Both the position numbers and the translations under genes were made by a program. The notes under the pieces are model-generated. The model had not been told where the DNA came from, did no database searches, and saw only the letters and a program-made list of their open reading frames with translations. From assembly GCF_003918875.1 (NCBI RefSeq), contig NW_025766181.1, forward strand, positions 434,001 to 498,000: a DNA stretch of 64,000 nt. Direction: 5' to 3'. Below, piece after piece: positions 28,562 through 59,004 of this stretch (positions are counted from its first letter, which is position 1; the number at the start of each line of letters is the position of its first letter). This DNA comes from Haliotis rubra. Taxonomy: Eukaryota.

Positions 28562-30012
28562 TCATCTCGATGAAAGTGAGGTCGATGGGAAATATTCCGC
28601 ATAACCAGATGAATGTTCGGAATGTGACAGAAATTGCTGGCCGTCGTGTGGAGACATCTGTCTGTCTTTTGAAACACCGAAATTGAATTCCATGTGGTCT
28701 GTATTAACCATATTTTGTGACGTTTCCGGTCCGTCCCCAGAATCACCTTGGTCACTGTCCACGTAACGAGGAACCGGTTCATAGAATTCAGGTGCCTCCG
28801 TGATCTTTTGATGTGCATCTGTGGAGTCTGTTTGCCCGCTCAAACTGTCACTGTCCAAGCCTCTATTAAAACCAGGAGCACCTGTATTGCTTCCCGCAGA
28901 TGTTGCCACTGCTGCCACCCCTTCACCTGCTCTATTGCTTGACTGGACTTCAGAAAAAGCTGAATGCAGACCGTTGAGGGTTGTGAATGATGGTATTTCA
29001 TTAGCAACTGACGTCAACAAGGAAGTCGATTTAGGGTCAACTTCGGTGCTTGTTAGAGGCCTACCCAAAAGCGTGTCTCCTACATGCGTGTCCGTAAGTT
29101 GCTGGGAAGTGTATGCATCAGTTGGACTAGAGATAGGTGGCAGTGAATTGGTTGTTCCACTTGACGGTTGATTCTGATTCCACTGAGCTCCACCAACGCC
29201 GTGTTGGGAGTTGAAAGACGTGGTAGTTGTTCCTGCTGAGCTACTCTGATGAGATGTTCCAGAAGGAGATCCACCTGTATTGACAGTCATCTGTATCCCT
29301 GATGTTTTGGTAGCGTCGCCATGACCTGTTTGTGTCCCCGCTTGGTGGTCACTCGTCCCTTGCGGCAACATCTGTATCCCAGGAAGTGTCATAGTTTGCC
29401 TTTGGTGAGAATGCCCTTGAAGGGACAGTTGTGACTTAGTATGGCCAGTACCGCTCATACTTATAAAACCAGCCTCACCAGGAGACAAATGCGAGGCAGT
29501 GATCTGTACTAAATTTACGAGTGGATCTGCAATACTTTCCGAAATCACTGCTTTTGTTGAGCGTCCTGTACGTAGCGTTCCCTCTTGGTTCTTCAAAGAA
29601 TGTTGTTGTTTGTTTTGGCCCTGTACTCCCATTGCAACATCAAACAGCACGTTGTTTGAGCTATGAAGAGGTTCTGTAGCCATATTCGGCATTATAATAT
29701 CATTGACAGAACCCACAGAGGCCCTGTATGCTTGTGCGTTTTCTTGACTTGACAGCTTAGATTCTGCTGTAGGTGGGTTCTGCATGTCGATGTTAACTGC
29801 AGATAACGATTGTCCGTATGGCACAGATCCAGATGATGCTACAGTGTCAGGAGGAAGCTGATTGGACTGGGATTGGGTCACGGTTTTCATGACATTAACC
29901 GTTGTGGTTGCAGTGCCTGAGGTTGAACCTTGGGATGAGGCACTACTAGAGGGAGATGTATATGGAACAGGACTGTCCAAAGCTTGCGACATCTCATTCT
30001 GCAAATATGTAT
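28562..30012 (-). CDS. Giant secreted repetitive protein, last coding exon (~482 aa, S/T/Q/G-rich, no Cys, no TM segment)
   Basis: Acceptor ttaatttatttcag, phase 1, in frame with ORF 28562..30004; TGA at 28564-28562. Confidence 0.8.
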
Positions 30013-30238
30013 CTGAAATAAATTAAAATAATCATATTACGGCTAACGTTTAATATGATCTCTGCATATATATCGTAATGCTTCTTTAAAATGAGACAGT
30101 CATTTCTAGCCTTTTTCCATTAGGTTGAATGGTGATGAAAGGCAATGACCTTGGGGTGTCAGCATGATGTTGGGTAAAAGTGTAAAGATATTTAGACTGA
30201 AGATGGTTAAACTCTCAGTGACCTACGTGTATATCACA

Positions 30239-30378
30239 GTGAGTGAGTGAGTTGGTTTTTGCGCCGTTATTAAGCAATATTCCAGCAACATCACGGCGGG
30301 GGACACCAGAAATGGGTTTCACACATTGTACCCAGGTGGGGAATCGAACTCGGGCCTTCGGAGTGACAAGCGAACGTA
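30239..30378 (-). mobile_element. SINE family A, 5'-truncated
   Basis: Family A body and tail. Confidence 0.85.
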
Positions 30379-31348
30379 TCAGAGACGTATGTAGACATGT
30401 ATGGAACTATCCCAGAACTGCTGAGTTTTCTCCTCTTTTCTTGCAATGCAACCAACCGTGCCAAATGTGGTCCACTGCAATCGGAGATGCACGTTTGTGT
30501 TACGAAGCCAATCATCTCTACAGATTTTCTGAATGTGTCAAGCCTATTGTGAATGCGTATAAAGATCCTCTCATTGACGGTAGCATGCAAAATACGTGTT
30601 TCTATCCCAGAAGTATTCTTTAAAATATTTTAGTCAGATTAGTCCTTTTAGTATGCATATGAAATTTGGAAGATCTGAGAGTATGGCAAAAATCTATTTA
30701 CTGGCTTCTGCAAACACTGACGATCTCGTTTAAGGCGAATATGGCTCATAACCATCGTAAATAAACTAACAATAGTAAAATAGATTTGGGTACGGTTGTG
30801 AAGTAATATTAATGTAGGGTATAAGAACGGGGCTTCACAAATATGATACCTACGATGTTCTTACGGTGTTGGTGTTGTTCGGCATTCGCAGACGGATGGT
30901 AATGAGATATGGTTTATTAAGTATGCTGTATCAACATTTAATACCTACAATTTACAATTAACAATAGTTCAAGGTATAACGTTCCCAGAGCATACCACAT
31001 GTATTTTGATAACCAGAAAAGTGTTGTCGTTTTCGCAAATAGTGAATTGGAGTATCAAATTAGTCTTCTTAAGGCTTGAGAACTGCTTTGTCGGTGGATA
31101 AATAATTTAAACGTAGGTGGCAAAATATATTTACATATACGGGGCATAGAAACTAAGAACCATTTTTTCTTGTATATGCAACTTTTGATGCTATAAGAAT
31201 GAAATAGCTACCAAAGACATGTATCACTCACTAATGAATGCTATCATGCATACAGTTTATAAAACAACAAAATTGAACCAAACTATCAAACAACGATGTA
31301 CAAATATAATCATTATGCTTGTACAAATACCATGGTTGTATGAAGAAA

Positions 31349-31472: not shown

Positions 31473-31740
31473 CAAAAATCAATAAAGTATTGATTGTGTA
31501 GGACCATGAAGCAGCAGTAAGATATCGATCCTTCGTGATTAGTTAATCAAATACACGCATCCTTTGCAAATGTATACGCAATTCACTTCCAAAAAACATT
31601 GCCTGCATTCCTATTATAAAGATAATGATCTTATGAAAACATTGTACGCGATCTAAGGTGATACTAACCTAAGTTGTTAAAACCTTGTGTAGATAAGAAC
31701 TGCATCACATCATTTGAAATGGGTCCATATTCCGTCGTAC

Positions 31741-31755
31741 CTGAGTAACCTCCGC
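31741..31755 (-). CDS. Candidate 15-nt micro-exon of the giant gene (GGGYS)
   Basis: atgcatttcag|GCGGAGGTTACTCAG|gtacga; symmetric phase 1-1. Confidence 0.4.
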
Positions 31756-31920
31756 CTGAAATGCATTTATGAATATTACAATTATACCGAGTGGCCAATG
31801 GTCAAATGAGGGACAATATGATGATGAAATGTCAACCTAGATCGGTCTCACTGAATACACGTTGGCATATTCAGACAGTCATTAGTCATGCTTTACTAAA
31901 TATGTTTTTCATTAAGCACA

Positions 31921-32612: not shown

Positions 32613-32645
32613 CTTGTCCGTTCACAGCCGTATAGTCGAACAGAC
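32613..32645 (-). CDS. Candidate 33-nt micro-exon of the giant gene (GLFDYTAVNGQ)
   Basis: ctttgttcctatttccag acceptor, AAG|GTATTG donor, symmetric phase 1-1, open frame. Confidence 0.6.
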
Positions 32646-32996: not shown

Positions 32997-35900
32997 CTGG
33001 TAAGGTTGGGGTGTGACCCCCTCTACTAGGAGTGGGAGGGATAATCGAGGGATGGGAAGGAGGAGATGCAGGGGAAGAGGCATCAGTGCTTGTAGAAAAT
33101 TGTCGGTCTGTTCCTGTGTGTGCTCCGCCTTGTTTGCTCTTTTCACCACCCCCATTTAACCTCCAATTTTGTTTTTGACTTCCCCCCATACCCTTCATGA
33201 TCCCAGACAACGGTTGCATTTCATGCAATGTCTTATGACCTGTGAATCCTTGATGTTTTGAACTTGAAATACCATTTTCTGAATGTGCTCCCATCTCAGT
33301 ACTAACTGCTGCGCGATGCAGTTCAGGTGTGCCTACCTCAGCATTGTGACCAGCTCTATTGTTAGATGATACTCTATTGGCAGGGATTCTTCTCTGGTTC
33401 CCAAATTCGTTTGCATATGTCTTGAAAGGGTCTGTAGGACTCAACCCAGACGCACGTGTCCTCCTATTATTTGAAAAAATAGCTTTCACCTCAACCTCAC
33501 TCTCATTCAGTTCTTTAGATGTCTCGCTAGGTTCTTGTGGTACAGGGTTTACAGAATTGTAACCGGAATCTCGTGTGCTGAAAATGTACATGTGAGGAGC
33601 ACGTTGTGTATCAGAACTTCCATCAGACTCTGTACGTAAAGCAATTGTGTCAAGAGACATTTGTCCGATTGGAGTAGGCGCTACTTTCCTTGCTAAATAC
33701 GCTTTAAGCAGCGAATGACTTATATGCATATCAATACAAGTTTCCGTTTTGTTGCATTTTGAATCCGAACTGGTACCAAACCCGTTGTTTTCCTGTTGGA
33801 AGCTGCTTTGGCTTTTTGTCTGTGGTTTGGACTGTTTTTCACCATGGAGGACAGATGCTTCACCACGAGAAGCTCCAGTAGTGGATATTTCTATTTCAAC
33901 CTTGGGTGCTCCATACCTTTGTACGTAGTGCTGTATTTTGTTGTCTTGCACTATGGCATCTCCATTCGTACTCAAGGGCTTGTTCACTGTATTCACATGA
34001 TGTCTATGGGACTTGGACTCTTGACTGGAAGCTTCTTTATTGGGTGAGTGTTGGAGGATATTGATGGAATCAGCTACGGTGTGAGGGACAACGGGGTGGT
34101 TAATGTTATTCTCTGATAATGGAACTGACTGTCCCTCTACAGGTTTGGGAGTGTACTTGTAGGATTCTGTGGGAGTGAAAGCATATCCTTTCTGAGATGA
34201 TTGTTCTTGTAACATGTGCGCTGAGTGGTGTCTTGTATGAAATAATGTTTCCAGTTTAGAATGTATTTTATCTGTGCCTGTTGGTGTTTCCTTATTAGTC
34301 ATATTTGTTTTCAAGGTTGCATTTATTTTCTGTTTATCGATACAGTTTGGAGTGTGACATTTAGATAAAGATGGAGAAATCTTGCTGAATATCTGTGTAG
34401 ATACTTTATTCTTTCCCTGATTGATTCTACTGCTATTGCTAGTTGACTGTGAATATATATTGGTTATACTCTCTGCTGGAGTAACGGTACGTCCATATGA
34501 AGAAAGTACACTTTTTGAAACGGTTTCAGAATTGCTATTTGTAGGTAATGGCTGTCCGTCTAAGTGTAGAGCGGCGCTGGGCGATGTATTATGTGTCGAA
34601 AGGGAATTTCGTGTTGTGGCACTGATCATTTTAGCTGTGCATGTTTTCGTGGTGCAGTTTGCTGAAGTAACTGACTGTGTTGGAACACTGACATTGCGTT
34701 CAGCATCAAGCTGATATACTGCAGTATTTGGTTTGTTAAGGGTCTGTGTATGATGTGATTGTTTTCCGCTTTGCACCTTTCTGTGATTGTGAATGTCTTG
34801 CATTGTTGTATTAGCATCTTTACCTTCAGAAACAGTGTTTGACTGATCCAACCCTGACGTTTGTTGAACAGTGTTACTTGCTGACGCAACTGTTTGGATG
34901 AAAACAGTGTTAACATGGGGATGTGTTTCACCATAGGATGTAGCTGTTCCCGTCGATTTTAGCTTCCCTGTGGCCTTCGGTGAAGCATTGCTGTCTAAAT
35001 ATGCCTGAACCTTGGCATCACTTATATGCTTATCTATGCAGGTTACTGGAGAGCATTTAGTGTTAGGAAGTTGACCTGATCGTGTTAGATGTTTCTCAAG
35101 AGTTACACCGCCTAATGCACCACCATCACCATCTAAAGACTTGACGTTCAAGGGAACAGGAGTAGCACTGGGCCCATTTTGACCTGCTATAGTGCTGTAA
35201 AAAGATGAAGCAAAACCTGGCAGAATACGATTTGGGGTATTGCTTGTACCCTCGAGATGGCTCAAAGGCTCTTTCACAGAGGTTGTTGTCTTGTCTTGCT
35301 TTCCAATTGCAGAATGTTGTGCAGATAGACTGTGAGCATCAGTAGATTCAAATGTTAGTCTTTCAGGGATGATTGGGTTGTCTCTAGTTTGTGCGTTAAC
35401 AATTTCGGGTAAGGAGGGACTGGCTGTTTCAGTGTGTGGGGTTGGATTTCCTGGCTTATTAGAGACACGTTGAATGTTTGTTGCCGTGTATGTATGATGT
35501 GCTAGAAAACTGGACGACTTTGTGGTCGAATGCGAATTGGCAGATACAGTGTTTTGTGACTCGAATGTTGTCTGAGAGCCACTGTTTCTATGTGTACCGG
35601 TAGTTCCTGTGTTTGTGGATGCGTATGTAGAGTCAGCTGGGATATTTGCAAAACTTATGTGTGAATGTGTTCTCGTATTTCCAGTGTTTCCCAGTGCATG
35701 CCTGTGTTGGATGGTATACCAGTAGTTCCAGTGTTTCCCAGTGCACGTGTGGAATGTTCTAGGATAGTAGACGAGCCTGAGTTGGATGGTATACCAGTAG
35801 TTCCAGTGTTTCCCAGTGCATGTGTGGAATGTTCTAGGATAGTAGACGAGCCTGAGTTGGATGGTATACCAGTAGTTCCAGTGTTTCCATGTGTGGAATG

Positions 35901-38900
35901 TTCAGTGCACGTTGTGGAATGTTCCAGTGTTTCCCAGTGCACGTGTGGAATGTTCTAGGATAGTAGACGAGCCTGAGTTTGATGGTATACCAACAGTTCC
36001 AGTGTTTCTCAGTGCATGTGTGGAATGTTCTAGGGTAGTAGACGAGCCTGATTTGGAAGGGATACCAGCAGTTCCATTGTTTGCCCGTGCATGTGTGGAA
36101 TGTTCTAGGGTAGTAGACGAGCCTGATTTGGAAGGGATACCAGCAGTTCCAGTGTTTCCCAGTGCAAGTGTGGAATGTTCTAGAGTAGTAGACGAGCCTG
36201 AGTTGGAAGGGATACCAGCAGTTCCATTGTTTGCCCGTCCATGTGTGGAATGTTCTAGGGTAGTAGACGAGCCTGAGTTGGAAGGTATACCAGCAGTTCC
36301 AGTGTTTCGTGGCACTGATAGAGAATTAGTTGGGATATTCGAGGAGCGTGTGCTACTAGTTGCAGTGTTTGTGGATGGATGTGGAGAATTTGTTGGAACG
36401 TTACTGCCTGTGTTTAAATCTTTATATCCATTGTTTGTTAAGGGGTGTATAGGATGTGAAGGAATATTAGGTCCGGTAATTGATGAAACCGTAGTTCCAG
36501 CGTTTGTAGACGGATCTGCAGGATTTGTTGTAATGTTTGTAGGCCCTGTGTTTAAATGTTTGCTAGCAGTTTCTTCGGTTTTCAGTGGATCGGTAGAGTG
36601 GGTTAGTATATTAGTAGACACTGTGCCGAAATGTCCACCCGCAGTGTTATTGTCTATTGGTGGGAATGTAGGATGTTTAGGAGCATTAGAAGAACCAGTG
36701 TTTGAATATGTGCTAGCTGTTACAACCTTTATAGACGGATCCCCTGTATATGTTTTTGATTGTTCAATACCATTTTCAGTGTTTGGTGGTGGGTTTGTAG
36801 AATGAGATTGAATGTAAGAAACAGTATTTGAATGTATACCAGAAGTTCCAATGTGTCTTGAAGGGAATGTAAGATGTGTTGGAACATTCGAAGAACCAGT
36901 GTTTGAATATGTGCTAGCTGTTACAACCTTTATAGACGGATCCCCTGTATGTGTTTTTGATTGTTCAATACCATTTTCAGTGTTTGGTGGTGGGTTTGTA
37001 GAATGAGATTGAATGTAAGAAACAGTATTTGAATGTATACCAGAAGTTCCAATGTGTCTTGAAGGGAATGTAAGATGTGTTGGAACATTCGAAGAACCAG
37101 TGTTTGAATATGTGCTAGCTGTTACAACCTTTATAGACGGATCCCCTGTATGTGTTTTTGATTGTTCAATACCATTTTCAGTGTTTGGTGGTGGGTTTGT
37201 AGAATGAGATTGAATGTAAGAAACAGTATTTGAATGTATACCAGAAGTTCCAATGTGTCTTGAAGGGAATGTAAGATGTGTTGGAACATTCGAAGATCTC
37301 TTGTTTGAATTTGCAACTTTGCTGTTTGTTGGCGGGTTTGTTGAGCTTATAAGAATGTTCGAAGATACTGTATTAGAATGTGCACTGGCACTTTCAGTAT
37401 ATGTATCAAAAGTATGTGTTGGAAAATCAAACAAAATAGTGTTCGATCGTGTGGTAGCCGTTCTAGCGTTTGTGGGCGGATTTGTAGAATGTGTTTGAGA
37501 ACTGGAAAATACTGTGTTTGAATGTATACTGGCAGTTGCAATATTCCCGGATGTGTCTGACGGATATGTTGGAATGTTAGAAGAACCTGTGTTGGTTGAC
37601 TGATATAAAGTATGTGTTGAAACACTGGAAGAGCGACCGCTTGAATGCGTGCTAGTGTCTGTTGTCCCGAGCGTTTCAATTACTTGACTATTTGTCGAAC
37701 TTTGGCTGGAATGTATACTAGAAGTGGAAGAATCCATGTTTGAAAGTGTACTATCAGTTCCAGTGTTTATGGACGGGTCTGTAAGTGCTACAGTTTTTGT
37801 CGAAACAAAGTTCGAATGAGGGTTATCTGGACCACTGTTTGTTGGTGGATATGTTGGAAAATTAGGAGCATCTTTGTTGAAATGTTCTCTATCAACCTGA
37901 GGATTAGTTGGGTGACTAGGATTGTGCGGACTGTTAGCAGAACTTTCAATTGAATGTACACTAGCACTACCAGTGTTTGTAGTCCGGTGTGTAGTGTGAA
38001 TATTAGGAGGACCAGATTTACTTGATAACGAATTGATTGTATGCAAGGATTTTGTGTCGCTGTTCACTGAACTCATTGATGAAGAGACCTCATTTACATT
38101 TAAAGTGGATATTTCATTCGTAATAAAGTCGGTTTTGTTGTTTGTAGGTAAGGATGGTACTGCGTCTAGTTGCATATTCCCTATTGTCTTAGGCGAAGCA
38201 TTGCTTGTCAGATATGCATATAGTTTTCCTTGATTAATTGTTTTGTCGATGCAGATTTCTGTCACACATTTCGAAGCTTTAAGTGTTTGATTAGAATTTT
38301 GTTTTGTTTGATTGGAATGGTGTTCCTGCAGGACATTGTTTGAGGTATTACCGCTTGTGTCTTCCGGTGATTGAGAATAATTGGTGTCCTGGATAAGTCC
38401 AGATTGTGTCTGATTATGGAATATTTTGTGGCTGGAACTGTCTGATGCAACTGATAGCCCATGTGTTCGGTTTTGTGGTTCACTTTTTGTCAAGTTTGCC
38501 TTGAATTTGTCTCCAGTGATATGGTTGTCTGTTGTGGGATTTGTAGTATCAGGTCCGGATTTTGGTGGAGCGGAAGTATGTTGTGCAAATATTTGTAAAG
38601 TAACTGTAGAAGTATGTCTACCAGACAGCTGTGTGTTCAGTGGCGTGTCAGTGTCGTGTGTCCAAGATTGAGAAGAATCCTGGTGGGTGCTTGCTGGTTG
38701 ACTATTCATTGGTTTGAATACTGGCGTTGTTGGAATATGTTCAGAGGAAAGATCATAAGTGCTTGTTTCTAATGGCTCATATGCTGGATTTGTTGGCATG
38801 ATGGAAGAAACAGTGTTTGGATCTGAAATGGCAGTTTCAGTGTTTGTTGGTGCAAATGTAGGATGTGGGGACATATTATAAGAAGTTGCTTTGGAATGTG

Positions 38901-41900
38901 TGCCATCAATCCCAGTGTTTTTTGTTGCCTCTGTAGAATGTGTTGGAATATCAGATACGCCGAAATGTGTATGCATACCTGCAGTTGCAGAGTTTATTGT
39001 TGCAAATATGGGATGTGATGGGATATTAGACGAACCTGATTTTGAATTTGTACTTGCAGTTTCAATATTTGTTGCGTATGTGAGGTGTGATGAAGTTGGA
39101 GAAGAATCAGTGCTCGAATGTGTTCGATTAAAATCAGTGTTTGTTGGCGGGTGAGTGGGATGATTTGGAATATTAGCAGACCCTGGATTTGAATGTGCAC
39201 TAGTAATACCAGTGTTTGCAGTCAGATGTGCAGTGTGAATATTAGGAGGACCAGATGTACTTGATGCCTCCATTGGTTGCAAGGGATTTGTTTCGTATTG
39301 CACTGGACGCAGTGATGAAGTGGATTCGCTTACATTTGAAGTGGATATTTCTTTCGTAATAGAGTCGGTTTTGTTGTTTGTAGATATGGATGGTACTGCA
39401 TCTAGTTGCATATTCCCTACTGCCTTAGGCGAAGCATTGCTTGTCAGATATGCATATAGTTTTCCTTGATTAATTGTTTTGTCGATGCAGATTTCTGTCA
39501 CACATTTCGAAGCTTTAAGTGTTTGATTAGAATTTTGTTTTGTTTGATTGGAATGGTGTTCCTGCAGGACGTGGTTGGAGGTATTACCGGTTGTGTCTTC
39601 CGGTGACTGAGAATAATTAGTGTCCTGGATAAGTCCAGACTGTGGTTGTTGGTGGAATGTATTGTGGATGGAACTGTCTGGTGCTAGTGGTATTCCATGT
39701 CTTGGGTTTAGTGATTCGTTGTTTGTCAAATTTGAATGTGTTGGGATACCAGAAGCCCCGGAATTTGTATGTATACCTGCAGTTGCAGGGTTTGTGGCTG
39801 CGTATGTGGGATGTGATGAGATATCTAACGAACTTGTTTTGGAATTTGTACTAACTGTTCCAATATCTGTTGTAACAACAGAAGACCATGTATTTGAATT
39901 TGTGCTTTCAGGTGCAGGATTTGTTGGCCCGCTTGGAGGTTGAGTTGGCAGAATATAAAACCCTGATGTTGAAAGTATGCCATTATTGCCAATATTAGTC
40001 GGGGGGTATGTAGGATGTATTGGAAGATTAGAAGCCTCTGAGTTTAAATGTGTACTACCTCGTAAAGGGTCTGCTGTTGTGTATGTTGGATGAGTCAGAA
40101 GAACAGACGAACCTGTGTTTGAATAAATACTATCAGTTGCAGGATGTGTTAGAGGAATAGACGAATGTGTACTAGCTGTTCCAGTGTTGGTTGGTGTGTG
40201 CATTGGATGAGACAGAAAAAAAGAAGAATCTGTGTTTGGATAAATACTATTCGTTGCCTGATTTGTTGGCGGGTATGTTGGATGAATAGGAGACCCTGTG
40301 TTTGAACGTGTACTACCTTTGTCAACGCTCGTTGGCGAGTACTTAGGTTGTGTTTGAATATTAGAAAACACTGTGCTTGATTGTTTACTAGCAGTGGTTG
40401 TGATTGCTGGTGCGTATGTAGAAAGTGATGGAATATCGGACGAACCTGTTTTTGAATTTTCACTATTTCCAGGAAATGTAAGAATCGAAGACCTTGTGTT
40501 TGAATAAATAGTATCAGTTCCAATGTTTGCTGCCGTGTTTGTGGGATGTATTGGATCAATAGGAGAACCCAATCTGGAATGCGTACTAACGCTTTCAGTC
40601 TGTGTTGTCAGGTATGGATAATGTGCTGGATTATCAGAGGGACTCGTGTTGGAATGAGTTCTTTCAGATTGTGTTGTTAGGTTTATATGAGGCACTGGAG
40701 TATTGAATAAGCGAGTGTTCGATTGTGTACTGACACTCTGTGTTGAAATATCAGAAGAATGTGCATTGTCAGTTCCAGTGTTCGTTGGCACGTGTGGAGC
40801 ATGTGCCAGATCATTATTAGAACCGGTGTTTAATTGTTTTGGCGTTTGAATATTACGTCCAGTGTTTAAAAGTGGATATGTTTCAGACGAATCAGTGTTA
40901 GATGTTAATATATCTATCAGATGCATATTTTTAGTGTTGTGTGTAACGGATTTCAATGATGATGTGAGGGAAGTGGCTACATCGTTCGTAATAGCGGCGG
41001 TACTGGATTTTGTTCCTATGGATGTTAGTGCATCTACTTGCCTATTCCCTATAGCCTTAGGTGAAGCATTGCTTGTCATATATGTCCTGAGTTTAGTTTC
41101 ACTTATATTCTTTTCTATGCAGGTTTGTGTCACACATTTCAGTGTTTGATGTGAAGTACTACCTTTTGTGTCTGATGATGCTGGAGGTGTATTTGTGTTC
41201 TGGGCACGTCCAGAGTGTGTTTGAGTATAGGGTTCTAAATTATCAGGTGATGCTGATATGCCATGAGTTCTCGGGGTAATGTCCAACCAAGGATGCCCAG
41301 GTGCAGCTCTGTCTACAGATGCAGGGGTTATACCAGTGGGTATTTCTTTGAGTGTATCCTGGCTACGAGATGATTTACGACTTTGATTGGCGCCAACACC
41401 ATGTACTACACTGTGTGAGGAAGAGGACTGACGTATGCCATCTCCTTGGGCTAATGGGATCACAAAAGGAAGTACCTGGAGGTCAGTCTGAAGTGCCTCT
41501 CGGGATGAACTAATGCTGTTACCAGCTGCTTTGTACGAAACGGCATTAATGTTGGTATTTGTACTTGACGATGGTGGCGCTTCTAATTGTAAACTCCCTA
41601 TAGCCTTTGGGGAAGGATTTTTTGTCAAATATTCTTTGATCTTCTTTGAACTGATGTGCTTGTCTATGCAGATTACAGTAGCGCACTTGGGAGTTGGGAT
41701 TGTTCCAGTTGGGATTTCTTTTGCTGATTTGGAATTGTTTTCCAAACTGAATTTGCTCGATTTTCTAGCCGCAGGGCCTAAATGCACTTGAATGTTATTT
41801 ATACTTTGGGATAAAAAGTTGGATGAAGTGTCAACTCCTTCTCTGATGACAGTGCTACCCTCAGAAACAGACTGCTTATTATCAAAACTAGAATGAATTT

Positions 41901-44900: not shown

Positions 44901-47900
44901 TGACAAGCCTCCAGTTGTGTACTGTCCGCTTGTTGAGGCAGCTTGATTAGACATAGATTGTTGTCCACCAGGTGTTGACAAGCCTCCAGTTGTGTACTGT
45001 CCACTTGTTGAGGCAGCTTGATAAGACATAGATTCCAGTCCACCAGGTGTTGACAAGCCTCCAGTTGTGTACTGTCCGCTTGTTGAAGCATCTTGATTAG
45101 ATATAGATTGTTGTCCACCAGATACGGACAAATCCCCAGATGTGTACTGTCCGCTTGTTGAGGCAGCTTGATTAGACATAGATAGTTGTCCACCAAATGT
45201 CGACAAGTCTCCTGTTGTGTACTGTCCACTTGTTGTGGCAGCTTGATTAGACATAGATGGTTGTCCACCAAATGTTGACAAGTCTCCAGTTGTGTACTGT
45301 CCAATTGTTGAGGCAGCTTGATTAGACATAGATTGTTGTCCACCAGGTGTTGACAAGCCTCCAGTTGCGTACTGTCCGCTTGTTGAGGCAACTTGATTAG
45401 ATGTAGATGGTTGTCCACCAAATGTCGACAAGTCTCCAGTTGTGTACTGTCCGCTTGTTGAGGCAGCTTGATTAGACATAGATTGTTGTCCACCAGGTGT
45501 TGACAAGCCTCCAGTTGTGTACTGTCCACTTGTTGAGGCAGCTTGATAAGACATAGATTCCAGTCCACCAGGTGTTGACAAGCCTCCAGTTGTGTACTGT
45601 CCGCTTGTTGAGGCAGCTTGATTAGATATAGATGGTTGTCCACCAAATGTTGACAAGTCTCCAGTTGTGTACTGTCCACTTGTTGAGGCAGCTTGATTAG
45701 ACATAGATTGTTGTCCACCAGGTGTTGACAAGCCTCCAGTTGTGTACTGTCCACTTGTTGAGGCAGCTTGATTAGACATAGATTGTTGTCCACCAGGTGT
45801 TGACAAGCCTCCAGTTGTGTACTGTCTGCTTGTTGAGGCAGCTTGATTAGACATAGATTGTTGTCCACCAGGTGTTGACAAGCCTCCAGTTGTGTACTGT
45901 CCACTTGTTGAGGCAGCTTGATTAGATGTAGATTGTTGTCCACCAAATGTTGAGAAGTCTCCAGTTGTGTACTGTCCGCTTGTTGAGGCAGCTTGATTAG
46001 ATATAGATTGTTGTCCACCAGATGCGGACAAGTCCCCAGATGTGTACTGTCCGCTTGTTGAGGCAGCTTGATTAGATATAGATTGTTGTCCACCAAATGT
46101 TGACAAGTCCCCAGTTGTGTACTGTCCGCTTGTTGAGGCAGCTTGATTAGATATAGATTGTTGTCCACCAGATGTTGACAAGCCTCCAGTTGTGTACTGT
46201 CCACTTGTTGAGGCAGCTTGATTAGACATAGATTGTTGTCCACCAGGTGTTGACAAGCCTCCGGTTGTGTACTGTCCACTTGTTGAGGCAGCTTGATTAG
46301 ACATATTAGATTGTTGTCCACCAGATGTCGACAAATCTCCAGTTGTGTACTGTCCACTTGTTGAAGCAACTTGATTAGACATAGGTTGTTGTCCACCAAA
46401 TATCGACAAGTCTCCAGTTGTGTACTGTCCGCTTGTTGAAGCAACTTTATTAGACATAGATTGTTGTCCACCAGATGTTGACAAGTCTCCAGTTGTGTAC
46501 TGTCCGCTTGTTGAGGCAACTTGATTAGACATAGATTGTTGTCCACCAAATGTCGACAAGTCTCCAGTTGTGTACTGTCCACTTGTTGAAGCAACTTGAT
46601 TAGATGATTGTTGTCCGATTGTTGTGTACTTCAGATGTATAACCAGTCTCCAAGTTTGTGTACTGTCCACTTGTTGAGGCAGCTTGATTAGATAGATTGT
46701 TGTCCACCAGATTGTTGACAAGCCTCCACTGTCAGATTGATTAGACGATTGACAAATCTCCAGTTGTGTACTGTCCACTTGTTGAGGCAGCTTGATTAGA
46801 TATAGATTGTTGTCCACCAGATGCGGACAAGTCCCCAGATGTGTACTGTCCGCTTGTTGAGGCAGCTTGATTAGATATAGATTGTTGTCCACCAAATGTT
46901 GACAAGTCCTCCAGTTGTGTACTGTCCGCTTGTTGAGGCAGCTTGATTAGACATAGATTGTTGTCCACCAGGTGTTGACAAGCCTCCGGTTGTGTACTGT
47001 CCGCTTGTTGAGGCAGCTTGATTAGACATAGATTGTCGTCGACCAGATACGGACAAATCTCCGGTTGTGTACTGTCCAATTGTTGAGGCAGCTTGGTTAG
47101 ACATAGATTGTTGTCCACCAAATGTTGAGAAGTCTCCAGTTGTGTACTGTCCGCTTGTTGAGGCAACTTGATTAGACATAGGTTGTTGTTGTCCACCAGA
47201 TACGGATAAATCTCCTGTTGTGTACTGTCCGCTTGTTGAGGCAGCTTGATTAGATATAGATTGTTGTCCACCAGATGCGGACAAGTCCCCAGATGTGTAC
47301 TGTCCGCTTGTTGAGGCAACTTGATTAGACATAGGTTGTTGTCCACCAAATGTCGACAAGTCTCCAGTTGTGTACTGTCCGCTTGTTGAGGCAACTTGAT
47401 TAGACATAGGTTGTTGTCCACCAAATGTCGACAAGTCTCCAGTTGTGTACTGTCCGCTTGTTGAGGCAACTTGATTAGACATAGGTTGTTGTCCACCAAA
47501 TGTCGACAAGTCTCCAGTTGTGTACTGTCCGCTTGTTGAGACAACTTGATTAGACATAGGTTGTTGTCCACCAAATGTCGACAAGTCTCCAGTTGTGTAC
47601 TGTCCGCTTGTTGAGACAACTTGATTAGACATAGGTTGTTGTCCACCAAATATCGACAAATCTCCAGTTGTGTACTGTCCACTTGTTGAGGAAACTTTAT
47701 TAGATATAGATTGTTGTCCACCAGATGTTGACAAGTCTACAGCTCCGTACTGTCCACTTGTTGAGGCAACTTGGTTAGATGCCGATTGCTGTCCTTCAGA
47801 TGTAAACCAGTCTCCATTTGTGTACTGTCCACTTGTTGAGGCAGCTTGATTAGACATAGATTGTTGTCCACCAGATACGGACAAATCTCCAGTTGTGTAC

Positions 47901-50900
47901 TGTCCGCTTGTTGAGGCAGCTTGATTAGATATAGATTGTTGTCCACCAGATGCGGACAAGTCCCCAGATGTGTACTGTCCGCTTGTTGAGGCAGCTTCAT
48001 TAGACATAGATTGTTGTCCACCAAATGTCGACAAGTCTCCAGTTGTGTACTGTCCGCTTGTTGAGGCAGCTTGATTAGATATAGATTGTTGTCCACCAGA
48101 TGTCGACAAGTCTCCAGTTGTGTACTGTCCGCTTGTTGAGGCAGCTTGATTAGACATAGATTGTTGTCCACCAGATGTTGACAAGCCTCCGGTTGTGTAC
48201 TGTCCACTTGTTGAGGCAGCTTGATTAGACATAGATTGTCGTCGACCAGATACGGACAAATCTCCGGTTGTGTACTGTCCACTTGTTGAGGCAACTTGGT
48301 TAGACATAGGTTGTTGTCCACCAAATATCGACAAATCTCCAGTTGTGTACTGTCCGCTTGTTGAGGCAACTTTATTAGATATAGATTGTTGTCCACCAGA
48401 TGTTGACAAGTCTACAGCTCCGTACTGTCCACTATTTGAGGCAACTTGGTTAGATGCCGATTGTTGTCCTTCAGATGTAAACCAGTCTCCATTTGTGTAC
48501 TGTCCACTTGTTGAGGCAGCTTGATTAGACATAGATTGTTGTCCACCAGATACGGACAAATCTCCAGATGTGTACTGTCCGCTTGTTGAGGCAGCTTGAT
48601 TAGATATAGATTGTTGTCCACCAGATGCGGACAAGTCTCCAGATGTGTACTGTCCGCTTGTTGAGGCAGCTTGATTAGACATAGATCGTTGTCCACCAAA
48701 TGTCGACAAGTCTCCAGTTGTGTACTGTCCGCTTGTTGAGGCAACTTGATTAGACATAGGTTGTTGTCCACCAAATGTCGACAAGTCTCCAGTTGTGTAC
48801 TGTCCGCTTGTTGAGGCAACTTGATTAGACATAGGTTGTTGTCCACCAAATGTCGACAAGTCTCCAGTTGTGTACTGTCCGCTTGTTGAGACAACTTGAT
48901 TAGACATAGATTGTTGTCCACCAAATGTCGACAAGTCACCAGTTGTGTACTGTCCACTTGTTGGGGCAATTTGATTAGACATAGGTTGTTGTCCACCAAA
49001 TGTCGACAAATCTCCAGTTGTGTACTGTCCGCTTGTTGAGGCAACTTTATTAGATATAGATTGTTGTCCACCAGATGTTGACAAGTCTACAGCTCCGTAC
49101 TGTCCACTATTTGAGGCAACTTGGTTAGATGCCGATTGTTGTCCTTCAGATGTAAACCAGTCTCCATTTGTGTACTGTCCACTTGTTGAGGCAGCTTGAT
49201 TAGACATAGATTGTTGTCCACCAGATACGGACAAATCTCCAGTTGTGTACTGTCCGCTTGTTGAGGCAGCTTGATTAGATATAGATTGTTGTCCACCAGA
49301 TGCGGACAAGTCCCCAGATGTGTACTGTCCGCTTGTTGAGGCAGCTTGATTAGCATTGATTAGACATAGATGTGTACTGTCCGCTTGTTGAGGCAGCTTG
49401 ATTAGATATAGATTGTTGTTCACCAGATGTTGACAAGTCTCAGATGTGTACTGTTTGAGGCAACTTGGTTAGATGCCGATTGTTGATGCCAGCTCCATTT
49501 GATTGTTGAAGCAGATTAGACATAGATTGTTGTCCACCAGGTGTTGACAAGCCCCCAGATGTGTACTGTCCGCTTGCTGAGGCAGCTTGATTAGACATAG
49601 ATTGTTGTCCACCCGATGTTGACAAGCCTCCAGCCTGTGATTGTTCTACACCAAGTCCCATGTTCTGATATCTACTAGCAGATACATCAACTTGATTCCC
49701 ACTCGCTGCCCTGTCTTGCATTGTATTCTTCACATCACTGGATGTTGCTCCCTGAACTGATGGCACATCTTTGGATGTGCCCAGTGTGTTAATGCCTTGC
49801 ATATCCTTTGAACTAGTTTTGATAATATTTTTGCCAACAACAGCTCCAACAGGCTGTGCATCCAGTCTTCCGTTGAAGTTAACATCTTGTAAGACATTTC
49901 CTTGGTAGGATGATGTGGTCTGTGCTTCAGTGTTCGCTGCTGCTACTGGCTGTGCATCTCTATTAGGTGTTGTAACTGGTTTCATGACATTGACTGAGTC
50001 AACTATGCCAGAAGTATACTGATGGTCAGTTCCTGGTCCTTGACGAGAATATATTTTTTGTGTAGGTTGATACGTTTGTTGGTCGTATACTGAGCCACTT
50101 ACTTCCTTTGGGGTAGAATCAAAGACAACGTTTTGCGTAGATTCGTAGAGATTTGGTTCGGAAGATATTAGATTAGGTTCGTTGTGGGTTTGTCCGACCT
50201 GTGAAGCCATGGAGTGAACAACTCCTTGCATATCCTTTGGCTGAGTAATGCTGTGTTGTGTTGAGCCTTGTAGAACGGCTTTGGTTCCTGAACGTCCGTA
50301 GTGTTCAGAGTTATATTGTGGTTTGGATGATATATGGTCTGGTCGTGTTGATGACGTTCCTCGTTGAGATTGAACGTTTGACTGGACCAGTAGCCCTTGT
50401 TCCGATCCGTGATTTGCCATCTGCTGCTTTTGATAACTAGTTCCACGAGGGTTATTCATTGGTAAACCAAGTGTCAGTGAGCCCGGTTCTCTTGCGTTGG
50501 CAGTGGTGCGCCTTTGCGAGCCTATATTTGTTTGTGTGTTACCTCTGATGTCTTGATATTGATAAGATGAACCAGAATTCATTACGTCTGGATGTCTAGT
50601 ACCTTGTGTTTTGTCGTATGAGCTCACAACGCCTTCGACTTGCATATTCACTGGGATTCCATCAACTAAAGCAACTCTGGGAGAGTTCACTCCAACATCA
50701 ACTGGGTTTATTATAAAACCGACTGGCATGTCCAGACTGCCTGTGACATGTCTCCTGGGAATACGAATCTGTGTGTCGAATGAAAATTTGGGTGTCGACA
50801 GAAGTGGTGTCGCTACTTGCACCTGAACTCTGTTATAATTAGCTGGCCGAGTTGAACCCGTGTTGGATGCTACACCGAAGCTCCCTCTTGGGTAATCGAA

Positions 50901-50932
50901 ACCCCCTTTGGCTGTTGTTCTCACTGGACCAA
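32997..50932 (-). CDS. Giant secreted repetitive (mucin-like or structural) protein, ~17.9-kb exon (~5,980 aa) with apparent frameshifts
   Basis: Acceptor tgttctttttcag (phase 1); overlapping or abutting ORFs 49440-51002, 46871-49423, 41799-46895, 35902-41787, 35655-35942, 32956-35277 with continuous composition; donor CAG|GTTTGT (phase 1); frame breaks near 49340-49500, 46600-46910, 41915-41957, 35890-35925 and ~35700. Confidence 0.85.
35680..36310 (-). repeat. Coding tandem repeat, 75-bp/25-aa unit (NTGTAGIPSNSGSSTTLEHSTHALG), ~8 copies
   Basis: Period 75 (35943 vs 36018). Confidence 0.9.
36689..37295 (-). repeat. Coding tandem repeat, 201-bp/67-aa unit x3, near-perfect
   Basis: GAAGAACCAGTGTTTGAATATG at 36689, 36890, 37091. 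Confidence 0.92.
37990..39705 (-). repeat. Intra-exonic duplication (~37990-38470 vs ~39225-39705, offset 1236)
   Basis: QSGLIQDTNYSQSPEDT...KASKCVTEICIDKTINQGKLYAYLTSNASPK occurs twice. Confidence 0.9.
44080..49640 (-). repeat. Coding tandem repeat, 75-bp/25-aa unit (STSGQYTTGDLSTFGGQQSMSNQAA), ~70 copies
   Basis: Read directly; degenerate towards 44080; 675-bp higher-order period. Confidence 0.97.
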
Positions 50933-55913: not shown

Positions 55914-56150
55914 CTGGCAGTGCTCTGTTCCAGGTACCTGGGGACCTGTGTGGTGGCTGTGACACAGGAACAATGGGTGTGAACATGGGCGGCGGAGAAG
56001 TCCATGGTGACTGTAGCGGTAGTACTGGGAAGCTGTACATTGGTATTCCCGGTCTTGGCATGATCAGAGGAATAGGGGGAAGGGTCCCCTGAAAGGGGCC
56101 TTTATAGAGCTGTGATATTTGACGAAAGGGTGATGGAGTGAAGGAGGGAG
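55914..56150 (-). CDS. Giant secreted protein, Pro-rich 237-nt exon (SPSFTPSPFRQISQLYKGPFQGTLPPIPLIMPRPGIPMYSFPV...RALP)
   Basis: Acceptor ctttttcgtttctgtttcag, donor CAG|GTAAGG, phase 1-1, frame-consistent with both neighbouring exons. Confidence 0.82.
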
Positions 56151-57293
56151 CTGAAACAGAAACGAAAAAGTTACTTTAGGATGTCTGGAACATGTTTCAT
56201 GTGAAGAGGTGTTAATGTTATTCGGGTATGGAATGTGGTGCATGTGAAGAGGGTTAATATCAGACGTGCTTGGGTAATGATTCATGTGAACGTTATAAGT
56301 GCTACGCATTTCTGTAACGTGATGAATGTAATCGTTGATCTGTGTTTGGCATGTCTGGACAATGATAAAAGAAAACGCTGATTTGTGTCAGTCGAATCTT
56401 GAATTTGATGAATGTAACCGTTGATGTGTGTCAGACGTGTACAGAGCATAATATATTGTCGAGACATGCTGGTCAATCTGTGAAATATTATCAAAGACCT
56501 CAAAACGAGAATTATTATTGTAAGACAACCACAAAAAATAATCAAACTTATCATGGTTTAACCTCATAATGACATTAACAAAATATTACATATTTTTGAT
56601 AAGACAAAATACCATCGTTTCTGGTTTTACTTTTTTTCCCAAGAAGCTATCAACTAATCCACATGGTTAAATATATATCCATTTCAAATTTTGTTGATGT
56701 GAGATGTTGTGAAAAGTGAAGTAACGTTGCTTTCAAGTTCAACACCTGTATATGGCAGGTGTGGCTGCACGAGCGTGTGTGACTACTTCAGCGTTTCTGA
56801 CTTCTGCTGACGAGGCACGTGTACACGTGTATCCCACTCAAACACAACATACTGACGCCCAGTTTACGTGCCCAATTGGTAGCACAAGTCAAGGCAATAA
56901 CAAGAACCACCATCTTTTAAGACCTAACGCCGATCTTTCGCTTCTGCGACAGACGCCTTATGCATTTGACCAGGCATGTGGTTCACCTCCAAAAGAAATT
57001 CACAGTTGAACTTTTGGTCTCTGTGCTCCGTATAGTTTCAACAGCCACTGCGTTCTAGTGCCAACAGTGCTCACAAGAGGCGACACAAGGAATTGTGTGG
57101 TATGGAGTATAGAATTAGAGTAGGGGTACACATAACCATGAACGACGCTGAGGTGCCGCTGTAGTGACAAATGTGCAACAAATACTTGCATCAAATCACT
57201 TTTCATACAAACTGTTACTTATTCATGAAGTATAAACCTAATCGAAAAAGACCGAAGTAGAAACAAAACTCCCACATAATGTCATATACTTAC

Positions 57294-57384
57294 ATGGGGA
57301 TGGTGAAAGCCGCATAGGAATGTACGTGCCATTTATTAAACATGTTAGACATGCTAACACGAATATATACACAAGCATATCCAT
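57294..57384 (-). CDS. Giant secreted protein, signal-peptide exon (MDMLVYIFVLACLTCLING|TYIPMRLSPSP)
   Basis: Acceptor ttttatttgcag (exon starts 57395), GCAATGG start context, hydrophobic signal, donor T|GTAAGT, phase 1. Confidence 0.82.
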
Positions 57385-59004
57385 TGCGTTCCTTCCTGCA
57401 AATAAAACAAAAATCGTTTTTAGGGTAAACAATATACACATAAATGTCACTAAATGAATACAACATAAACAAATTCTAAAGACATCAAGTACATAACAAA
57501 TTTCATAAATTGTTAAACCGAATTAGTGAAAAGCGAGCATCGCAATCCAATCCTCCCGTCACAATGCACGGTGCACCGATGACGATCCACGAAAACGTGA
57601 AAGTAATTATTTAACTTTTGTCATATGATTTATCTCACAAATGTCGATTGGTGCTCAAGGCAGATGGGAAACAACACCCCTGCACTGACAGTTACACAAT
57701 GCCGCCAATCATGTAACTTCAAACAAAAGTACTTGGTTCCTGCGTAACGGTATAGTTCGAATATAATGATGGTGTTGAACTCGCTTTTGTATTTGATTTG
57801 TCAAAATAATGGATTTGTTTCATTCCTCTGGCGACGTCTTCGATTGTAGGGATTATGGATAAAGCTATAAACTACTGCCTTAAATCATAGTTTATAGGTG
57901 TAAGTTTATGCATCAATGCCAACGAGAAACACATATTCTTGAAAATAAGATTAAACTGTATTCTGCCATATCATATATTATAACAAACTCGAGGAAAGCT
58001 CTATAGTGTCAGTGAGGTAATTGGTTATAATTTATGTGGAAATTAACAACTTTAAAACGAAACATCTGGTAAATTGTTTCGTCATAGATGGCCGACTGTG
58101 TTCTGCAATCACCGTTCATGACGTTCAAAGGTATTGTTTGATGACTGTTGATTGGGTTCAATGATGACAGCAGCGACTTAAATACATTACAAATTATCTT
58201 TCATTAGAATTCTATCTTTTGAATACGTTTTAACAGAGAAATAATAATAGCTTAAGTAAGGAACTTTGCCTGGATTAGTTTACTTTAAACATTTCCGTGT
58301 AAAGACATCTTTCATGTCTACTAATATACTTATTGAATCTCATCAGAATCTGTTTCAGTGGACAATGGACATTGGTCTTTCTCTGCGGCGGTGTTAAACA
58401 ATATCCAAATCCAAACAGTCATCATGAGGCGAGTGACGTGCACTGAAGAACTAACACTTACAAGATTTGATTGAGTGTCAAGAAAACGCGTTTAAAACAT
58501 TGGGCTCAACCCATTCCAGTCATTCAATATCATCCATCTAGCACGATTAAATACGTGTCCTCAAACCCAGCTCTTGATCGTAAACTCCCCAAACTAAAAG
58601 GTAAAAATCTTACGTGGAAGCTATGACGCTAAAAAATACTCAACTTAACACATTGAATGCCCGATTCATTTAAATTACCGCACTTCACCTGTCGTGCTGT
58701 GACACATTAACTATATTAATAACATGAAATCGGGAAACCTTTACCTTCTTTTGAGTAGAGTATTCCAAACACAAAGGTAATCAATTTCTATTTTACGACA
58801 CATCCCGCATTGCTTGCGGCAGTTCAATTTAATTAAATTTAGTGCTGTCAAACGAACAGGTTACAGAGATTTAATCAGTGTAGCCTCCAAATATACGGAC
58901 ACCGACATACATGTACAGAGATCGTAGCTGACATACAGGAGAGCATTTAATTGATTGACATCCTTTACTCCAGAAACCGTCTGGTGGTGATTACGACAAT
59001 AATC

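What the first reader, a model, noticed from the sequence alone, without database searches (positions are those of the whole stretch)
28562..57395. Giant (~6,600 aa) secreted repetitive protein gene with a ~17.9-kb exon
Seen: canonical splice sites join a signal-peptide exon (57384-57294), a Pro-rich exon (56150-55914), a giant exon (50932-32997), candidate micro-exons and a last exon (30012-28562), every junction in phase 1. The product is S/T/Q/G/N/H-rich, with no transmembrane segment and no Cys-rich vWD or cystine-knot termini. Established: gel-forming mucins have vWD/CK termini and membrane mucins have a TM segment, so it fits neither class. Inference: a lineage-specific structural secretion (pedal adhesive mucus, shell or periostracum matrix, or egg coat) that automated annotation would split into several hypothetical genes.
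Basis: partly seen in the sequence, partly recalled or inferred. Interest (0 to 1): 0.9.

Follow-up and report, generated by a model that had tools for sequence, protein, structure and literature searches.

The report
Giant abalone mucin-like gene, frame-broken here
This is a real, very large gene for a secreted, sugar-coat-type repetitive protein whose counterpart is already annotated as one 5,472-residue protein in the abalone Haliotis asinina, but in this assembly its 17.9-kb exon is broken by several frame shifts and a stop, so the proposed 6,600-residue protein cannot be read from it.

Summary
The exon plan is right. The "one giant open exon" is not.

**Exon plan.** I fixed the micro-exons at 32645-32613 and 31755-31669. 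The Haliotis asinina RefSeq protein XP_067650662.1 (5,472 aa, "serine-rich adhesin for platelets-like") is collinear with every proposed exon, both micro-exons included. Identity runs from 59 to 88%.

**Broken frame.** 50932-32997 is five open frames in three phases.
- The frame changes five times inside the 75-nt tandem array.
- It changes once at a (GTCA)3 run in unique sequence, between ortholog residues 1972 and 1976.
- Truncated 46-nt and 47-nt units, with an in-frame TGA, break a second array.
- The CDS is 19,832 nt, not a multiple of 3.

**Cause of the breaks.** The three runs offered as RNA proved to be genomic DNA about 3% diverged, so there is no splice or expression evidence. One of their contigs lacks the 47-nt unit, which restores the frame there. 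I favour assembly errors or haplotype mixing (about 0.6) over real lesions.

**Protein.** It has a signal peptide and no transmembrane segment, Pfam domain, vWD or cystine knot.

**Annotation.** NCBI's pipeline did not split the H. asinina gene.

**Earlier scan notes.** Nothing on other DNA; three notes cover sub-features of this stretch.

Moderate to low interest.

The parts
57294..57384 (-). Coding part of exon 1: ATG at 57384 and a signal-peptide-like start (MDMLVYIFVLACLTCLING). Donor GTAAGT follows 57294. 91 nt, ends in phase 1. An acceptor-like TTTGCAG just upstream (about 57399) hints at a further 5' non-coding exon.
   Evidence: Read. Hydrophobicity. 83% identical to residues 1-30 of H. 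asinina P0003.
55914..56150 (-). Exon 2, Pro-rich, 237 nt, phase 1 to 1.
   Evidence: Splice sites read. 88% identical to P0003 32-105, the best-conserved part.
32997..50932 (-). Giant exon-like block of 17,936 nt. It is collinear with P0003 residues 107-4977, with no intron-like insertion. As assembled it is split into five open frames in three phases.
49602..50932 (-). Unique N-terminal region of the giant exon (about 443 aa, no Cys). The first 250 aa are 74% identical to H. asinina.
   Evidence: AlphaFold2 gave no confident fold (pLDDT 30).
44394..49600 (-). Tandem array of about 68 units of 75 nt (25 aa, consensus close to NQAASTSGQYTTGDLSTSGGQQSMS). One Tyr per unit; S+T 34%, G 16%, Q 15%, Pro only 1-2%. 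The matching stretch of H. asinina (P0003 about 555-1175) is about 620 aa, room for roughly 25 units.
   Evidence: P0003 coordinates.
49330..49571 (-). Break B1: three abnormal units (spacings 115, 74, 52 nt). The repeat's reading frame goes 2, 0, 2, 0. Frame 2 stops at 49442-49440.
46580..46926 (-). Break B2: a 76-nt unit with one extra base near 46912-46905 (frame 0 to 1). Garbled units follow, with spacings 108 and 88 nt and stops at 46743 and 46734 (frame 1 to 2).
42390..42392 (-). Conserved internal donor (CAAG|GTAAAT, exon would end at 42392, phase 1). In H. asinina, isoform X2 (2,331 aa) joins ...ISFPQG straight to micro-exon 1 and skips about 3,140 residues.
41922..41934 (-). Break B3, in unique sequence: a (GTCA)3 run. 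Upstream coding is in frame 2 and aligns up to P0003 residue 1972. Downstream coding is in frame 1 and aligns from residue 1976. A fourth GTCA would read through.
35932..41895 (-). S/T/N/P/His-rich region (S+T 33%, His 5%, 30 N-x-S/T sites). It holds four CX4C mini-modules, a 1.2-kb internal duplication and a 201-nt x 3.2 repeat.
35688..36308 (-). Second 75-nt array (NTGTAGIPSNSGSSTTLEHSTHA-type units, about 8 copies). H. asinina has a single unit here. Break B4: a 46-nt unit (35931-35885, with TGA at 35904-35902) and a 47-nt unit (35735-35688) bracket 2.5 units read out of frame.
   Evidence: The X1 contig lacks 35725-35679.
32998..35700 (-). Unique C-terminal part of the giant exon (901 aa) with four more CX4C modules. 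64% identical to P0003 4081-4974.
   Evidence: Indels against a genome about 3% diverged are 9 and 18 nt.
32613..32645 (-). Micro-exon 1, 33 nt (GLFDYTAVNGQ), phase 1 to 1.
   Evidence: The same peptide, LFDYTAVNGQ, stands in P0003 and P0002.
31669..31755 (-). Micro-exon 2, 87 nt (GGGYSGTTEYGPISNDVMQFLSTQGFNNL), phase 1 to 1.
   Evidence: 82% identical to P0003 4987-5014.
28562..30012 (-). Last coding exon, 482 codons plus TGA (28564-28562). Cys-free and S/T-rich.
   Evidence: 71-75% identical to the C-terminus of P0003. 50% identical to P0001, whose genomic contig has the same acceptor position.

Best explanation
The stretch is one gene of a Haliotis (abalone) genome. It is the ortholog of H. 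asinina XP_067650662.1. It encodes a secreted, largely disordered, mucin-like glycoprotein.

**Layout (shown).**
- A signal peptide.
- A conserved Pro-rich exon.
- A block of about 18 kb with no intron.
- Two phase-1 micro-exons.
- A conserved 482-residue tail.

The large block carries a Tyr-bearing 25-residue array of about 68 units. It also carries S/T/N/P/His-rich stretches interrupted by eight small CX4C modules.

**How it likely works (inferred).** It enters the secretory pathway and is densely O- and N-glycosylated. It then serves as an extended, hydrated structural polymer of a mucus or matrix. Repeat number changes quickly between species. An internal donor at 42392 can yield a short isoform without the His-rich half.

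**State in this assembly (shown).** The reading frame is interrupted at about eight points and by one TGA, so no 6,600-residue ORF exists here.

**Cause of the breaks (inferred, about 0.6).** They are errors of assembly, polishing or haplotype mixing in tandem repeats, not real lesions.
For: **Orthology and exon plan.**
- The C-terminal exon finds P0003 (5,472 aa) and P0002 (2,331 aa) at E of about 1e-185. Both are RefSeq H. asinina isoforms X1 and X2.
- P0003 is collinear with the window:

| Window part | Identity to P0003 |
|---|---|
| exon 1 | 83% |
| exon 2 | 88% |
| N-terminal region | 67% |
| region after the array | 70% |
| following regions | 63% and 59% |
| 35700-32998 | 64% |
| micro-exon 2 | 82% |
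| last exon | 71% |

- P0003 reads ...PPGLFDYTAVNGQGGGYTGTTDYGPITNDVMQFLSTQGFSTLDAYLQNE. That is exactly the proposed junction contents.

**Secretion and class.** There is one N-terminal hydrophobic segment. No Pfam domain is found in the window pieces or the ortholog.

**The breaks are recent or artefactual.**
- There is no nonsense codon within any of the five segments, about 6,100 codons in all.
- The two flanks of the (GTCA)3 break align to adjacent ortholog residues, 1972 and 1976.
- In a genome about 3% diverged, the X1 contig lacks the 47-nt partial unit. The repeat frame then runs straight into the downstream frame, as in H. asinina.
- The listed indels inside coding 32997-35700 are 9 and 18 nt. 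Those in the introns are 1, 1, 11, 6, 1, 1, 3, 6 and 3 nt.
- Unchecked notes on the same genome report frameshifts in conserved genes elsewhere. This is a lead only.
Against: - No RNA evidence exists for this species. Runs X1-X3 are genomic, and no RNA-Seq run was listed. Junctions rest on canonical sites, matching phases and a Gnomon model in another species.
- The H. asinina locus could not be fetched, so I did not verify its exon boundaries on DNA.
- The frame breaks may be real. The (GTCA)3 break lies in unique sequence, where polishing should work.
- The upper truncated unit, with its TGA, was not covered by any listed contig piece.
- Nucleotide divergence in the coding block (about 2.9%) equals that in the introns (2.5-2.9%). 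Constraint on the residues is therefore weak.
- The secretion site, glycosylation and function are inferred from composition only.
Confidence: 0.78

Rival explanations
1. The frame breaks are real. In this individual or species the gene is a young pseudogene or a null allele, or it yields only a truncated product of about 600 residues that ends at 49440. The rest would be an untranslated remnant.
For: - There are about eight frame changes and a TGA in the sequence as given.
- One of them lies in unique sequence at a short tetranucleotide run.
- Several deletions have microhomology at their edges, as replication slippage produces.
- Substitution divergence in the coding block equals that of the introns.
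Against: - There are no nonsense substitutions in about 6,100 codons outside the shifted stretches.
- The ortholog is intact at 5,472 aa.
- A genome about 3% diverged lacks the 47-nt unit and is in frame at that point. Its listed coding indels are multiples of 3.
- All but one of the breaks sit in tandem arrays, where assemblies most often fail.
Confidence: 0.25
2. The five open frames and the last exon belong to several independent genes rather than one.
For: The open frames are in different phases, and ORF finders list them separately.
Against: - A single H. asinina protein covers them all in order. Neighbouring segments abut within a few residues.
- The same 75-nt repeat continues across the first two breaks.
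- There are no start codons with signal peptides and no splice sites at the segment starts.
Confidence: 0.02

Closest known systems
Haliotis asinina XP_067650662.1 / XP_067650664.1 ('serine-rich adhesin for platelets-like', isoforms X1 and X2; RefSeq automated models)
   Same: Same order of parts: signal peptide, Pro-rich exon, N-terminal region, 25-aa array, CX4C modules (9 against 8), both micro-exons and the C-terminal tail. Identity is 59-88% by region. The internal donor used by isoform X2 is conserved.
   Different: 5,472 aa and intact, against about 6,610 nominal codons here with a broken frame. The 25-aa array stretch is about 620 aa (roughly 25 units) against about 68 units here. It has one His-type 25-aa unit against about 8 here. 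No function has been studied, and no paper mentions it.
Gel-forming mucins (MUC2/MUC5AC type) and the vWD-rich proteins of limpet pedal mucus (PMC7333891)
   Same: Very large, secreted, a long central exon of tandem S/T-rich repeats, and fast change in repeat number.
   Different: No vWD, C8 or TIL domains and no cystine knot. The main array is Pro-poor (1-2%) and G/Q/Y-rich, unlike a classical PTS domain.
Small secreted mucins with short Cys modules flanking mucin domains (for example Toxocara Tc-MUC with six-Cys SXC motifs, as cited in PMC7333891)
   Same: S/T-rich stretches are punctuated by small Cys-bearing modules, and there are no polymerising vWD ends.
   Different: The module here has only two Cys (CX4C plus a short helix, about 35 aa). 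It matches no Pfam family, and AlphaFold2 gives it low confidence (pLDDT 58). The protein is over ten times larger.
Bacterial serine-rich repeat adhesins (SraP/GspB), the source of the RefSeq name
   Same: Only the Ser-rich composition.
   Different: This is a spliced animal gene with a eukaryotic signal peptide and introns. It has no Pfam-recognisable binding domain. The name is a composition artefact.
Resilin-type elastomers (one Tyr per short G/S-rich repeat, cross-linked through dityrosine) - a resemblance in working only, from my own knowledge
   Same: About 68 evenly spaced Tyr in a flexible, Pro-poor, G/S/Q-rich array with almost no charge.
   Different: No sequence relationship was tested or expected, and no evidence of cross-linking exists.

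Membership tests
Ortholog group of H. asinina XP_067650662.1 | Collinear similarity over all exons, including the termini | tested here: met
   nine regions, 59-88% identity, all in the same order.
Ortholog group of H. asinina XP_067650662.1 | Same exon-junction contents (both micro-exons, phase-1 joins) | tested here: met
   P0003 and P0002 both carry GLFDYTAVNGQ-GGGY...-D.YLQNE.
Ortholog group of H. asinina XP_067650662.1 | Continuous open reading frame | tested here: not met
   about eight frame changes and one TGA. CDS length mod 3 = 2.
Gel-forming mucins | N-terminal vWD/C8/TIL assemblies and a C-terminal cystine knot | tested here: not met
   Pfam scans of the window pieces and of P0002/P0003 found none. 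Both termini are Cys-free.
Gel-forming mucins | Central tandem repeats rich in Pro, Thr and Ser | tested here: inconclusive
   S+T is 33-35%. Pro is 1-2% in the main array and 8% in the His-rich part.
Membrane-tethered mucins | SEA domain and a transmembrane segment | tested here: not met
   No SEA domain in Pfam. No hydrophobic window apart from the signal peptide; the one at 41906-41850 lies in the wrong frame after the break.
Bacterial serine-rich repeat adhesins | A Pfam-recognisable ligand-binding region between two Ser-rich repeat blocks, in an intron-less bacterial gene | tested here: not met
   The gene has introns and a eukaryotic signal peptide. No Pfam domain of any kind was found. 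The LPxTG anchor was not searched as a motif.
Abalone egg-coat VERL / ZP proteins | ZP-N or ZP module repeats | tested here: not met
   No zona pellucida family in the Pfam scans. The only Cys are the CX4C pairs.
Secreted proteins (classical pathway) | Cleavable N-terminal signal peptide | tested here: inconclusive
   There is a hydrophobic h-region at residues 4-17 followed by ING|T, conserved in H. asinina. No signal-peptide predictor was available.

The most novel reading that the evidence does not exclude
This may be a vetigastropod-restricted structural glycoprotein of a new build. It would have no polymerising Cys-rich ends. It would carry a charge-poor, Pro-poor array with one Tyr per 25 residues, which could gel or be cross-linked through tyrosine as resilin is. 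It would also carry a His-rich half studded with an undescribed CX4C module, which an internal splice donor can drop. Repeat number would have more than doubled between abalone species. If so, it could be a main load-bearing polymer of abalone pedal mucus or another matrix.
Probability: 0.25. Interest if true: 0.5.

Novelty: new member of a known kind. Interest (0 to 1): 0.3.

Why it matters
- The protein belongs to the class of large repetitive secreted proteins that short-read transcriptomes and proteomes of mollusc mucus tend to miss (a point made in PMC7333891).
- A verified gene model would give proteomics of abalone mucus, shell or egg coat something to match against.
- The locus is also a concrete test of assembly quality. 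If the frame breaks are artefacts, tandem-repeat genes in this assembly need re-polishing before annotation.
- If the breaks are real, an abalone has recently lost a 6,000-residue secreted protein that its relative keeps.
- The RefSeq name of the ortholog is misleading and should not be passed on.

Tried and rejected
1. **RNA evidence.**
   - The look-up of sequencing runs (kind rna) offered X1-X3, marked "?".
   - Laid on 29940-35939, they proved to be genomic. Depth is even, about 54, over introns and exons. Contigs run across all splice sites. Every listed joint links SINE copies.
   - A second search restricted to "RNA-Seq" libraries listed none.
2. **Word-indexed protein searches.**
   - The 901-aa block 35700-32998 found nothing.
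   - The P0003 C-terminus found only itself.
   - The length filter and sparse sampling limit what these blanks mean.
3. **H. asinina locus.** It could not be fetched. P0003 is over the 5,000-residue limit, and P0002 is not on record.
4. **Pfam DUF3660 on the array.** The hit (E 9.5e-17, with no single stretch passing) is rejected as a summed low-complexity artefact. The weak hits (E 0.1-0.3) are rejected too.
5. **AlphaFold2.**
   - The CX4C module gave pLDDT 58 and one helix.
   - The N-terminal 250 aa gave pLDDT 30.
   - No fold search was worth running.
6. **ESM Atlas on the last exon.** Best score 0.68, nothing related.
7. **Literature.** Searches by name, accession, peptides and run id found no paper on this gene.
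8. **ORFs in intron 2.** Those at 55124-54393 and 54104-53463 are retrotransposon tails, not extra exons.
9. **Short introns at the breaks.** Rejected. The ortholog reads straight through those places.

Full report
**1. What is in the sequence**

- ATG at 57384. Exon 1 ends at 57294, before GTAAGT.
- Exon 2 is 56150-55914.
- The acceptor is AG|50932 and the donor is 32997|GTTTGT.
- Two micro-exons are fixed at 32645-32613 (33 nt) and 31755-31669 (87 nt).
- The last acceptor is AG|30012, and the stop is TGA at 28564-28562.
- The spliced N-terminus begins MDMLVYIFVLACLTCLING. This is the only genuine hydrophobic window in the whole product.

The central claim does not hold. The stretch 50932-32997 is not one open exon.

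A stop-to-stop scan gives five open frames:

| Segment | Frame | Codons |
|---|---|---|
| 51026-49443 | 2 | 528 |
| 49468-46874 | 0 | 865 |
| 46946-41802 | 2 | 1,715 |
| 41955-35905 | 1 | 2,017 |
| TGA at 35904-35902 | – | – |
| 35901-32959 | 1 | 981 |

I followed a fixed anchor through the 75-nt array.
- The repeat's own frame goes 2, 0, 2, 0 between 49571 and 49330. The unit spacings there are 115, 74 and 52 nt.
- It goes 0 to 1 at a 76-nt unit with one extra base near 46912-46905.
- It goes 1 to 2 across garbled units at 46776-46580. The spacings there are 108 and 88 nt, with stops at 46743 and 46734.

In unique sequence the frame goes 2 to 1 at a (GTCA)3 run, 41934-41923.

In a second 75-nt array, a 46-nt unit (35931-35885, holding the TGA) and a 47-nt unit (35735-35688) bracket 2.5 units read out of frame.

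The shifts cancel within each array. Only the (GTCA)3 shift is left uncompensated.

The spliced CDS is 19,832 nt, which leaves a remainder of 2. The figure of about 6,600 aa is therefore a nominal length.

**2. What it is**

The last exon (482 aa) was scored against 1.84 billion representative proteins. It found three:
- P0003, 5,472 aa;
- P0002, 2,331 aa;
- P0001, 483 aa.

P0003 and P0002 match over their C-termini at 75% identity.

P0003 and P0002 are RefSeq XP_067650662.1 and XP_067650664.1. Both are named "serine-rich adhesin for platelets-like", isoforms X1 and X2, of Haliotis asinina. The window is therefore from another abalone.

P0003 is collinear with the window from end to end:

| Window part | Identity | P0003 residues |
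|---|---|---|
| exon 1 | 83% | 1-30 |
| exon 2 | 88% | 32-105 |
| unique N-terminal region | 67% | 109-571 |
| region after the array | 70% | 1175-1972 |
| next block | 63% | 1976-2602 |
| following block | 59% | 2697-3346 |
| 35700-32998 | 64% | 4081-4974 |
| micro-exon 2 | 82% | 4987-5014 |
| last exon | 71% | 5017-5472 |

The ortholog reads ...PPGLFDYTAVNGQGGGYTGTTDYGPITNDVMQFLSTQGFSTLDAYLQNE. Both micro-exons are joined exactly as proposed.

No non-homologous insertion separates neighbouring segments. The 17.9-kb block therefore behaves as one exon. Its breaks are frame shifts relative to an intact ortholog, not introns.

Isoform X2 joins ...ISFPQG directly to micro-exon 1. The same internal donor, CAAG|GTAAAT with the exon ending at 42392 in phase 1, is present in the window.

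P0001 comes from a 2-kb Logan contig of run DRR299178. It is 50% identical over the last exon. Intron-like sequence and the same acceptor position lie upstream. The source organism could not be identified.

**3. Are the breaks real?**

The runs offered as RNA turned out to be genomic DNA about 3% diverged from the window.
- Depth is even, about 54, in introns and exons.
- Contigs cross every splice site.
- All listed joints connect SINE copies.

So there is no splice or expression evidence, and no RNA-Seq run was listed.

The DNA is still informative.
- X1's 3,685-nt contig runs 35822-35726 and then directly 35678-32059. It lacks the 47-nt partial unit.
- With those 47 nt removed, the repeat reads ...LEHSTRALGNTG and runs straight into NTRTHSHISFANIPAD in the downstream frame.
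- H. asinina has the same arrangement, with a single such unit.
- Within coding 32997-35700 the listed indels are 9 and 18 nt. In the introns they are 1, 1, 11, 6, 1, 1, 3, 6 and 3 nt.
- Outside the shifted stretches, about 6,100 codons contain no nonsense codon.
- Other unchecked notes on this genome report frameshifts in conserved genes. This is a lead for general indel error, not support.

Against an artefact:
- the (GTCA)3 break lies in unique sequence;
- the upper truncated unit was not covered by any listed contig piece;
- substitution divergence in the coding block (about 2.9%) equals that of the introns.

I put assembly or haplotype-mixing error at about 0.6 and real recent lesions at about 0.25-0.3. 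The rest is undecided.

**4. The protein and how it probably works**

*Shown*
- One signal-peptide-like start and no transmembrane segment.
- No Pfam domain in the window pieces or the ortholog.
- A 25-residue array of about 68 units. The matching stretch of H. asinina, P0003 about 555-1175, is about 620 aa, room for roughly 25 units.
- Array composition: S+T 34%, G 16%, Q 15%, one Tyr per unit, almost no charge and only 1-2% Pro.
- A second half with S+T 26-33%, His 5% and 40 N-x-S/T sites.
- All mature-protein Cys lie in eight CX4C modules (consensus KC.T.TCIDK.IS..KL.AYL..N.SPKAIG). H. asinina has nine.
- AlphaFold2 gives the module one short helix at low confidence. It gives no fold for the N-terminal 250 residues.

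*Inferred*
- It is a secreted, heavily glycosylated, extended polymer of a mucus or matrix.
- The conserved ends and Pro-rich exon serve assembly or anchoring.
- The arrays serve as hydrated spacers, possibly Tyr-cross-linkable.

The tissue is unknown.

**5. Comparison with what is known, and novelty**

It is a member of the H. asinina ortholog group, except for the intact-ORF criterion.

It works like a mucin but fails the defining domain tests for:
- gel-forming mucins;
- membrane mucins;
- ZP egg-coat proteins.

It is also not a bacterial serine-rich adhesin. It is a spliced animal gene with no binding domain that Pfam recognises, so the RefSeq name reflects composition only.

Known limpet pedal-mucus proteins are rich in vWD, EGF and SRCR domains (PMC7333891). 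This protein is unlike them.

No paper mentions it.

**Verdict**

This is a new member of a known kind: a lineage-restricted secreted mucin-like protein. It is already modelled automatically in a sister species and is frame-broken in this assembly. Interest 0.3.

Noticed in passing
window 53463-55124 (minus strand): Two adjacent ORFs of 244 and 214 codons in intron 2 are related to each other. They look like C-terminal tails of a non-LTR retrotransposon ORF2 (shared ...RFRCSSHDL...GRY...C..C...EDE.HFLL.CP... motif). They are not exons of the giant gene.
   Followed up: partly
window about 30140-30540, 31340-31540, 31740-32140 (introns) and about 28310-28470 (3' UTR): Copies of a tRNA-like SINE ending in CACTCACTCA repeats. 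In the laid DNA contigs their summed word depth reaches 0.7-3.6 million, against about 54 for unique sequence. Every listed 'joint' links these copies.
   Followed up: partly
window 33613-41721 (minus strand); P0003 2024-4767: A CX4C mini-module of about 35 residues (KC.T.TCIDK.IS..KL.AYL..N.SPKAIG) occurs 8 times here and 9 times in H. asinina. It holds every Cys of the mature protein. It has no Pfam match, and AlphaFold2 gives pLDDT 58 with one helix.
   Followed up: partly
window 42390-42392 (minus strand): An internal phase-1 donor inside the giant exon is conserved with H. asinina, whose isoform X2 uses it to skip about 3,140 residues. An X2-like transcript here would bypass the breaks at 41934 and 35931-35688, but not those in the main array.
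   Followed up: partly
window 44394-49600 and 35688-36308: Frame shifts cancel within each tandem array (three +1 shifts in the first; 46 + 47 nt in the second). The unique flanks therefore stay in register. Only the (GTCA)3 shift at 41934-41923 changes the register of the gene's two halves. The chance of both cancelling at random is about 1 in 9, so this is only suggestive.
   Followed up: no
window 29940-35939 against X1-X3 contigs: Substitution divergence from a second genome is about 2.9% in the coding block 32997-35678 and 2.5-2.9% in the introns. The residues of this region seem to evolve almost freely, while the listed indels keep the frame.
   Followed up: no
window 13343-15837: A long CT/GA-rich low-complexity tract (reads as SLSLSL... 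or RERERE... in several frames) is interrupted by four N runs (13374-14666). It has an extreme AT skew (0.68). It produces spurious ORFs of up to 781 codons.
   Followed up: no
window about 57398-57400 (minus strand): An acceptor-like TTTGCAG lies 14 nt upstream of the ATG, so a further non-coding 5' exon may lie upstream of the reported start.
   Followed up: no
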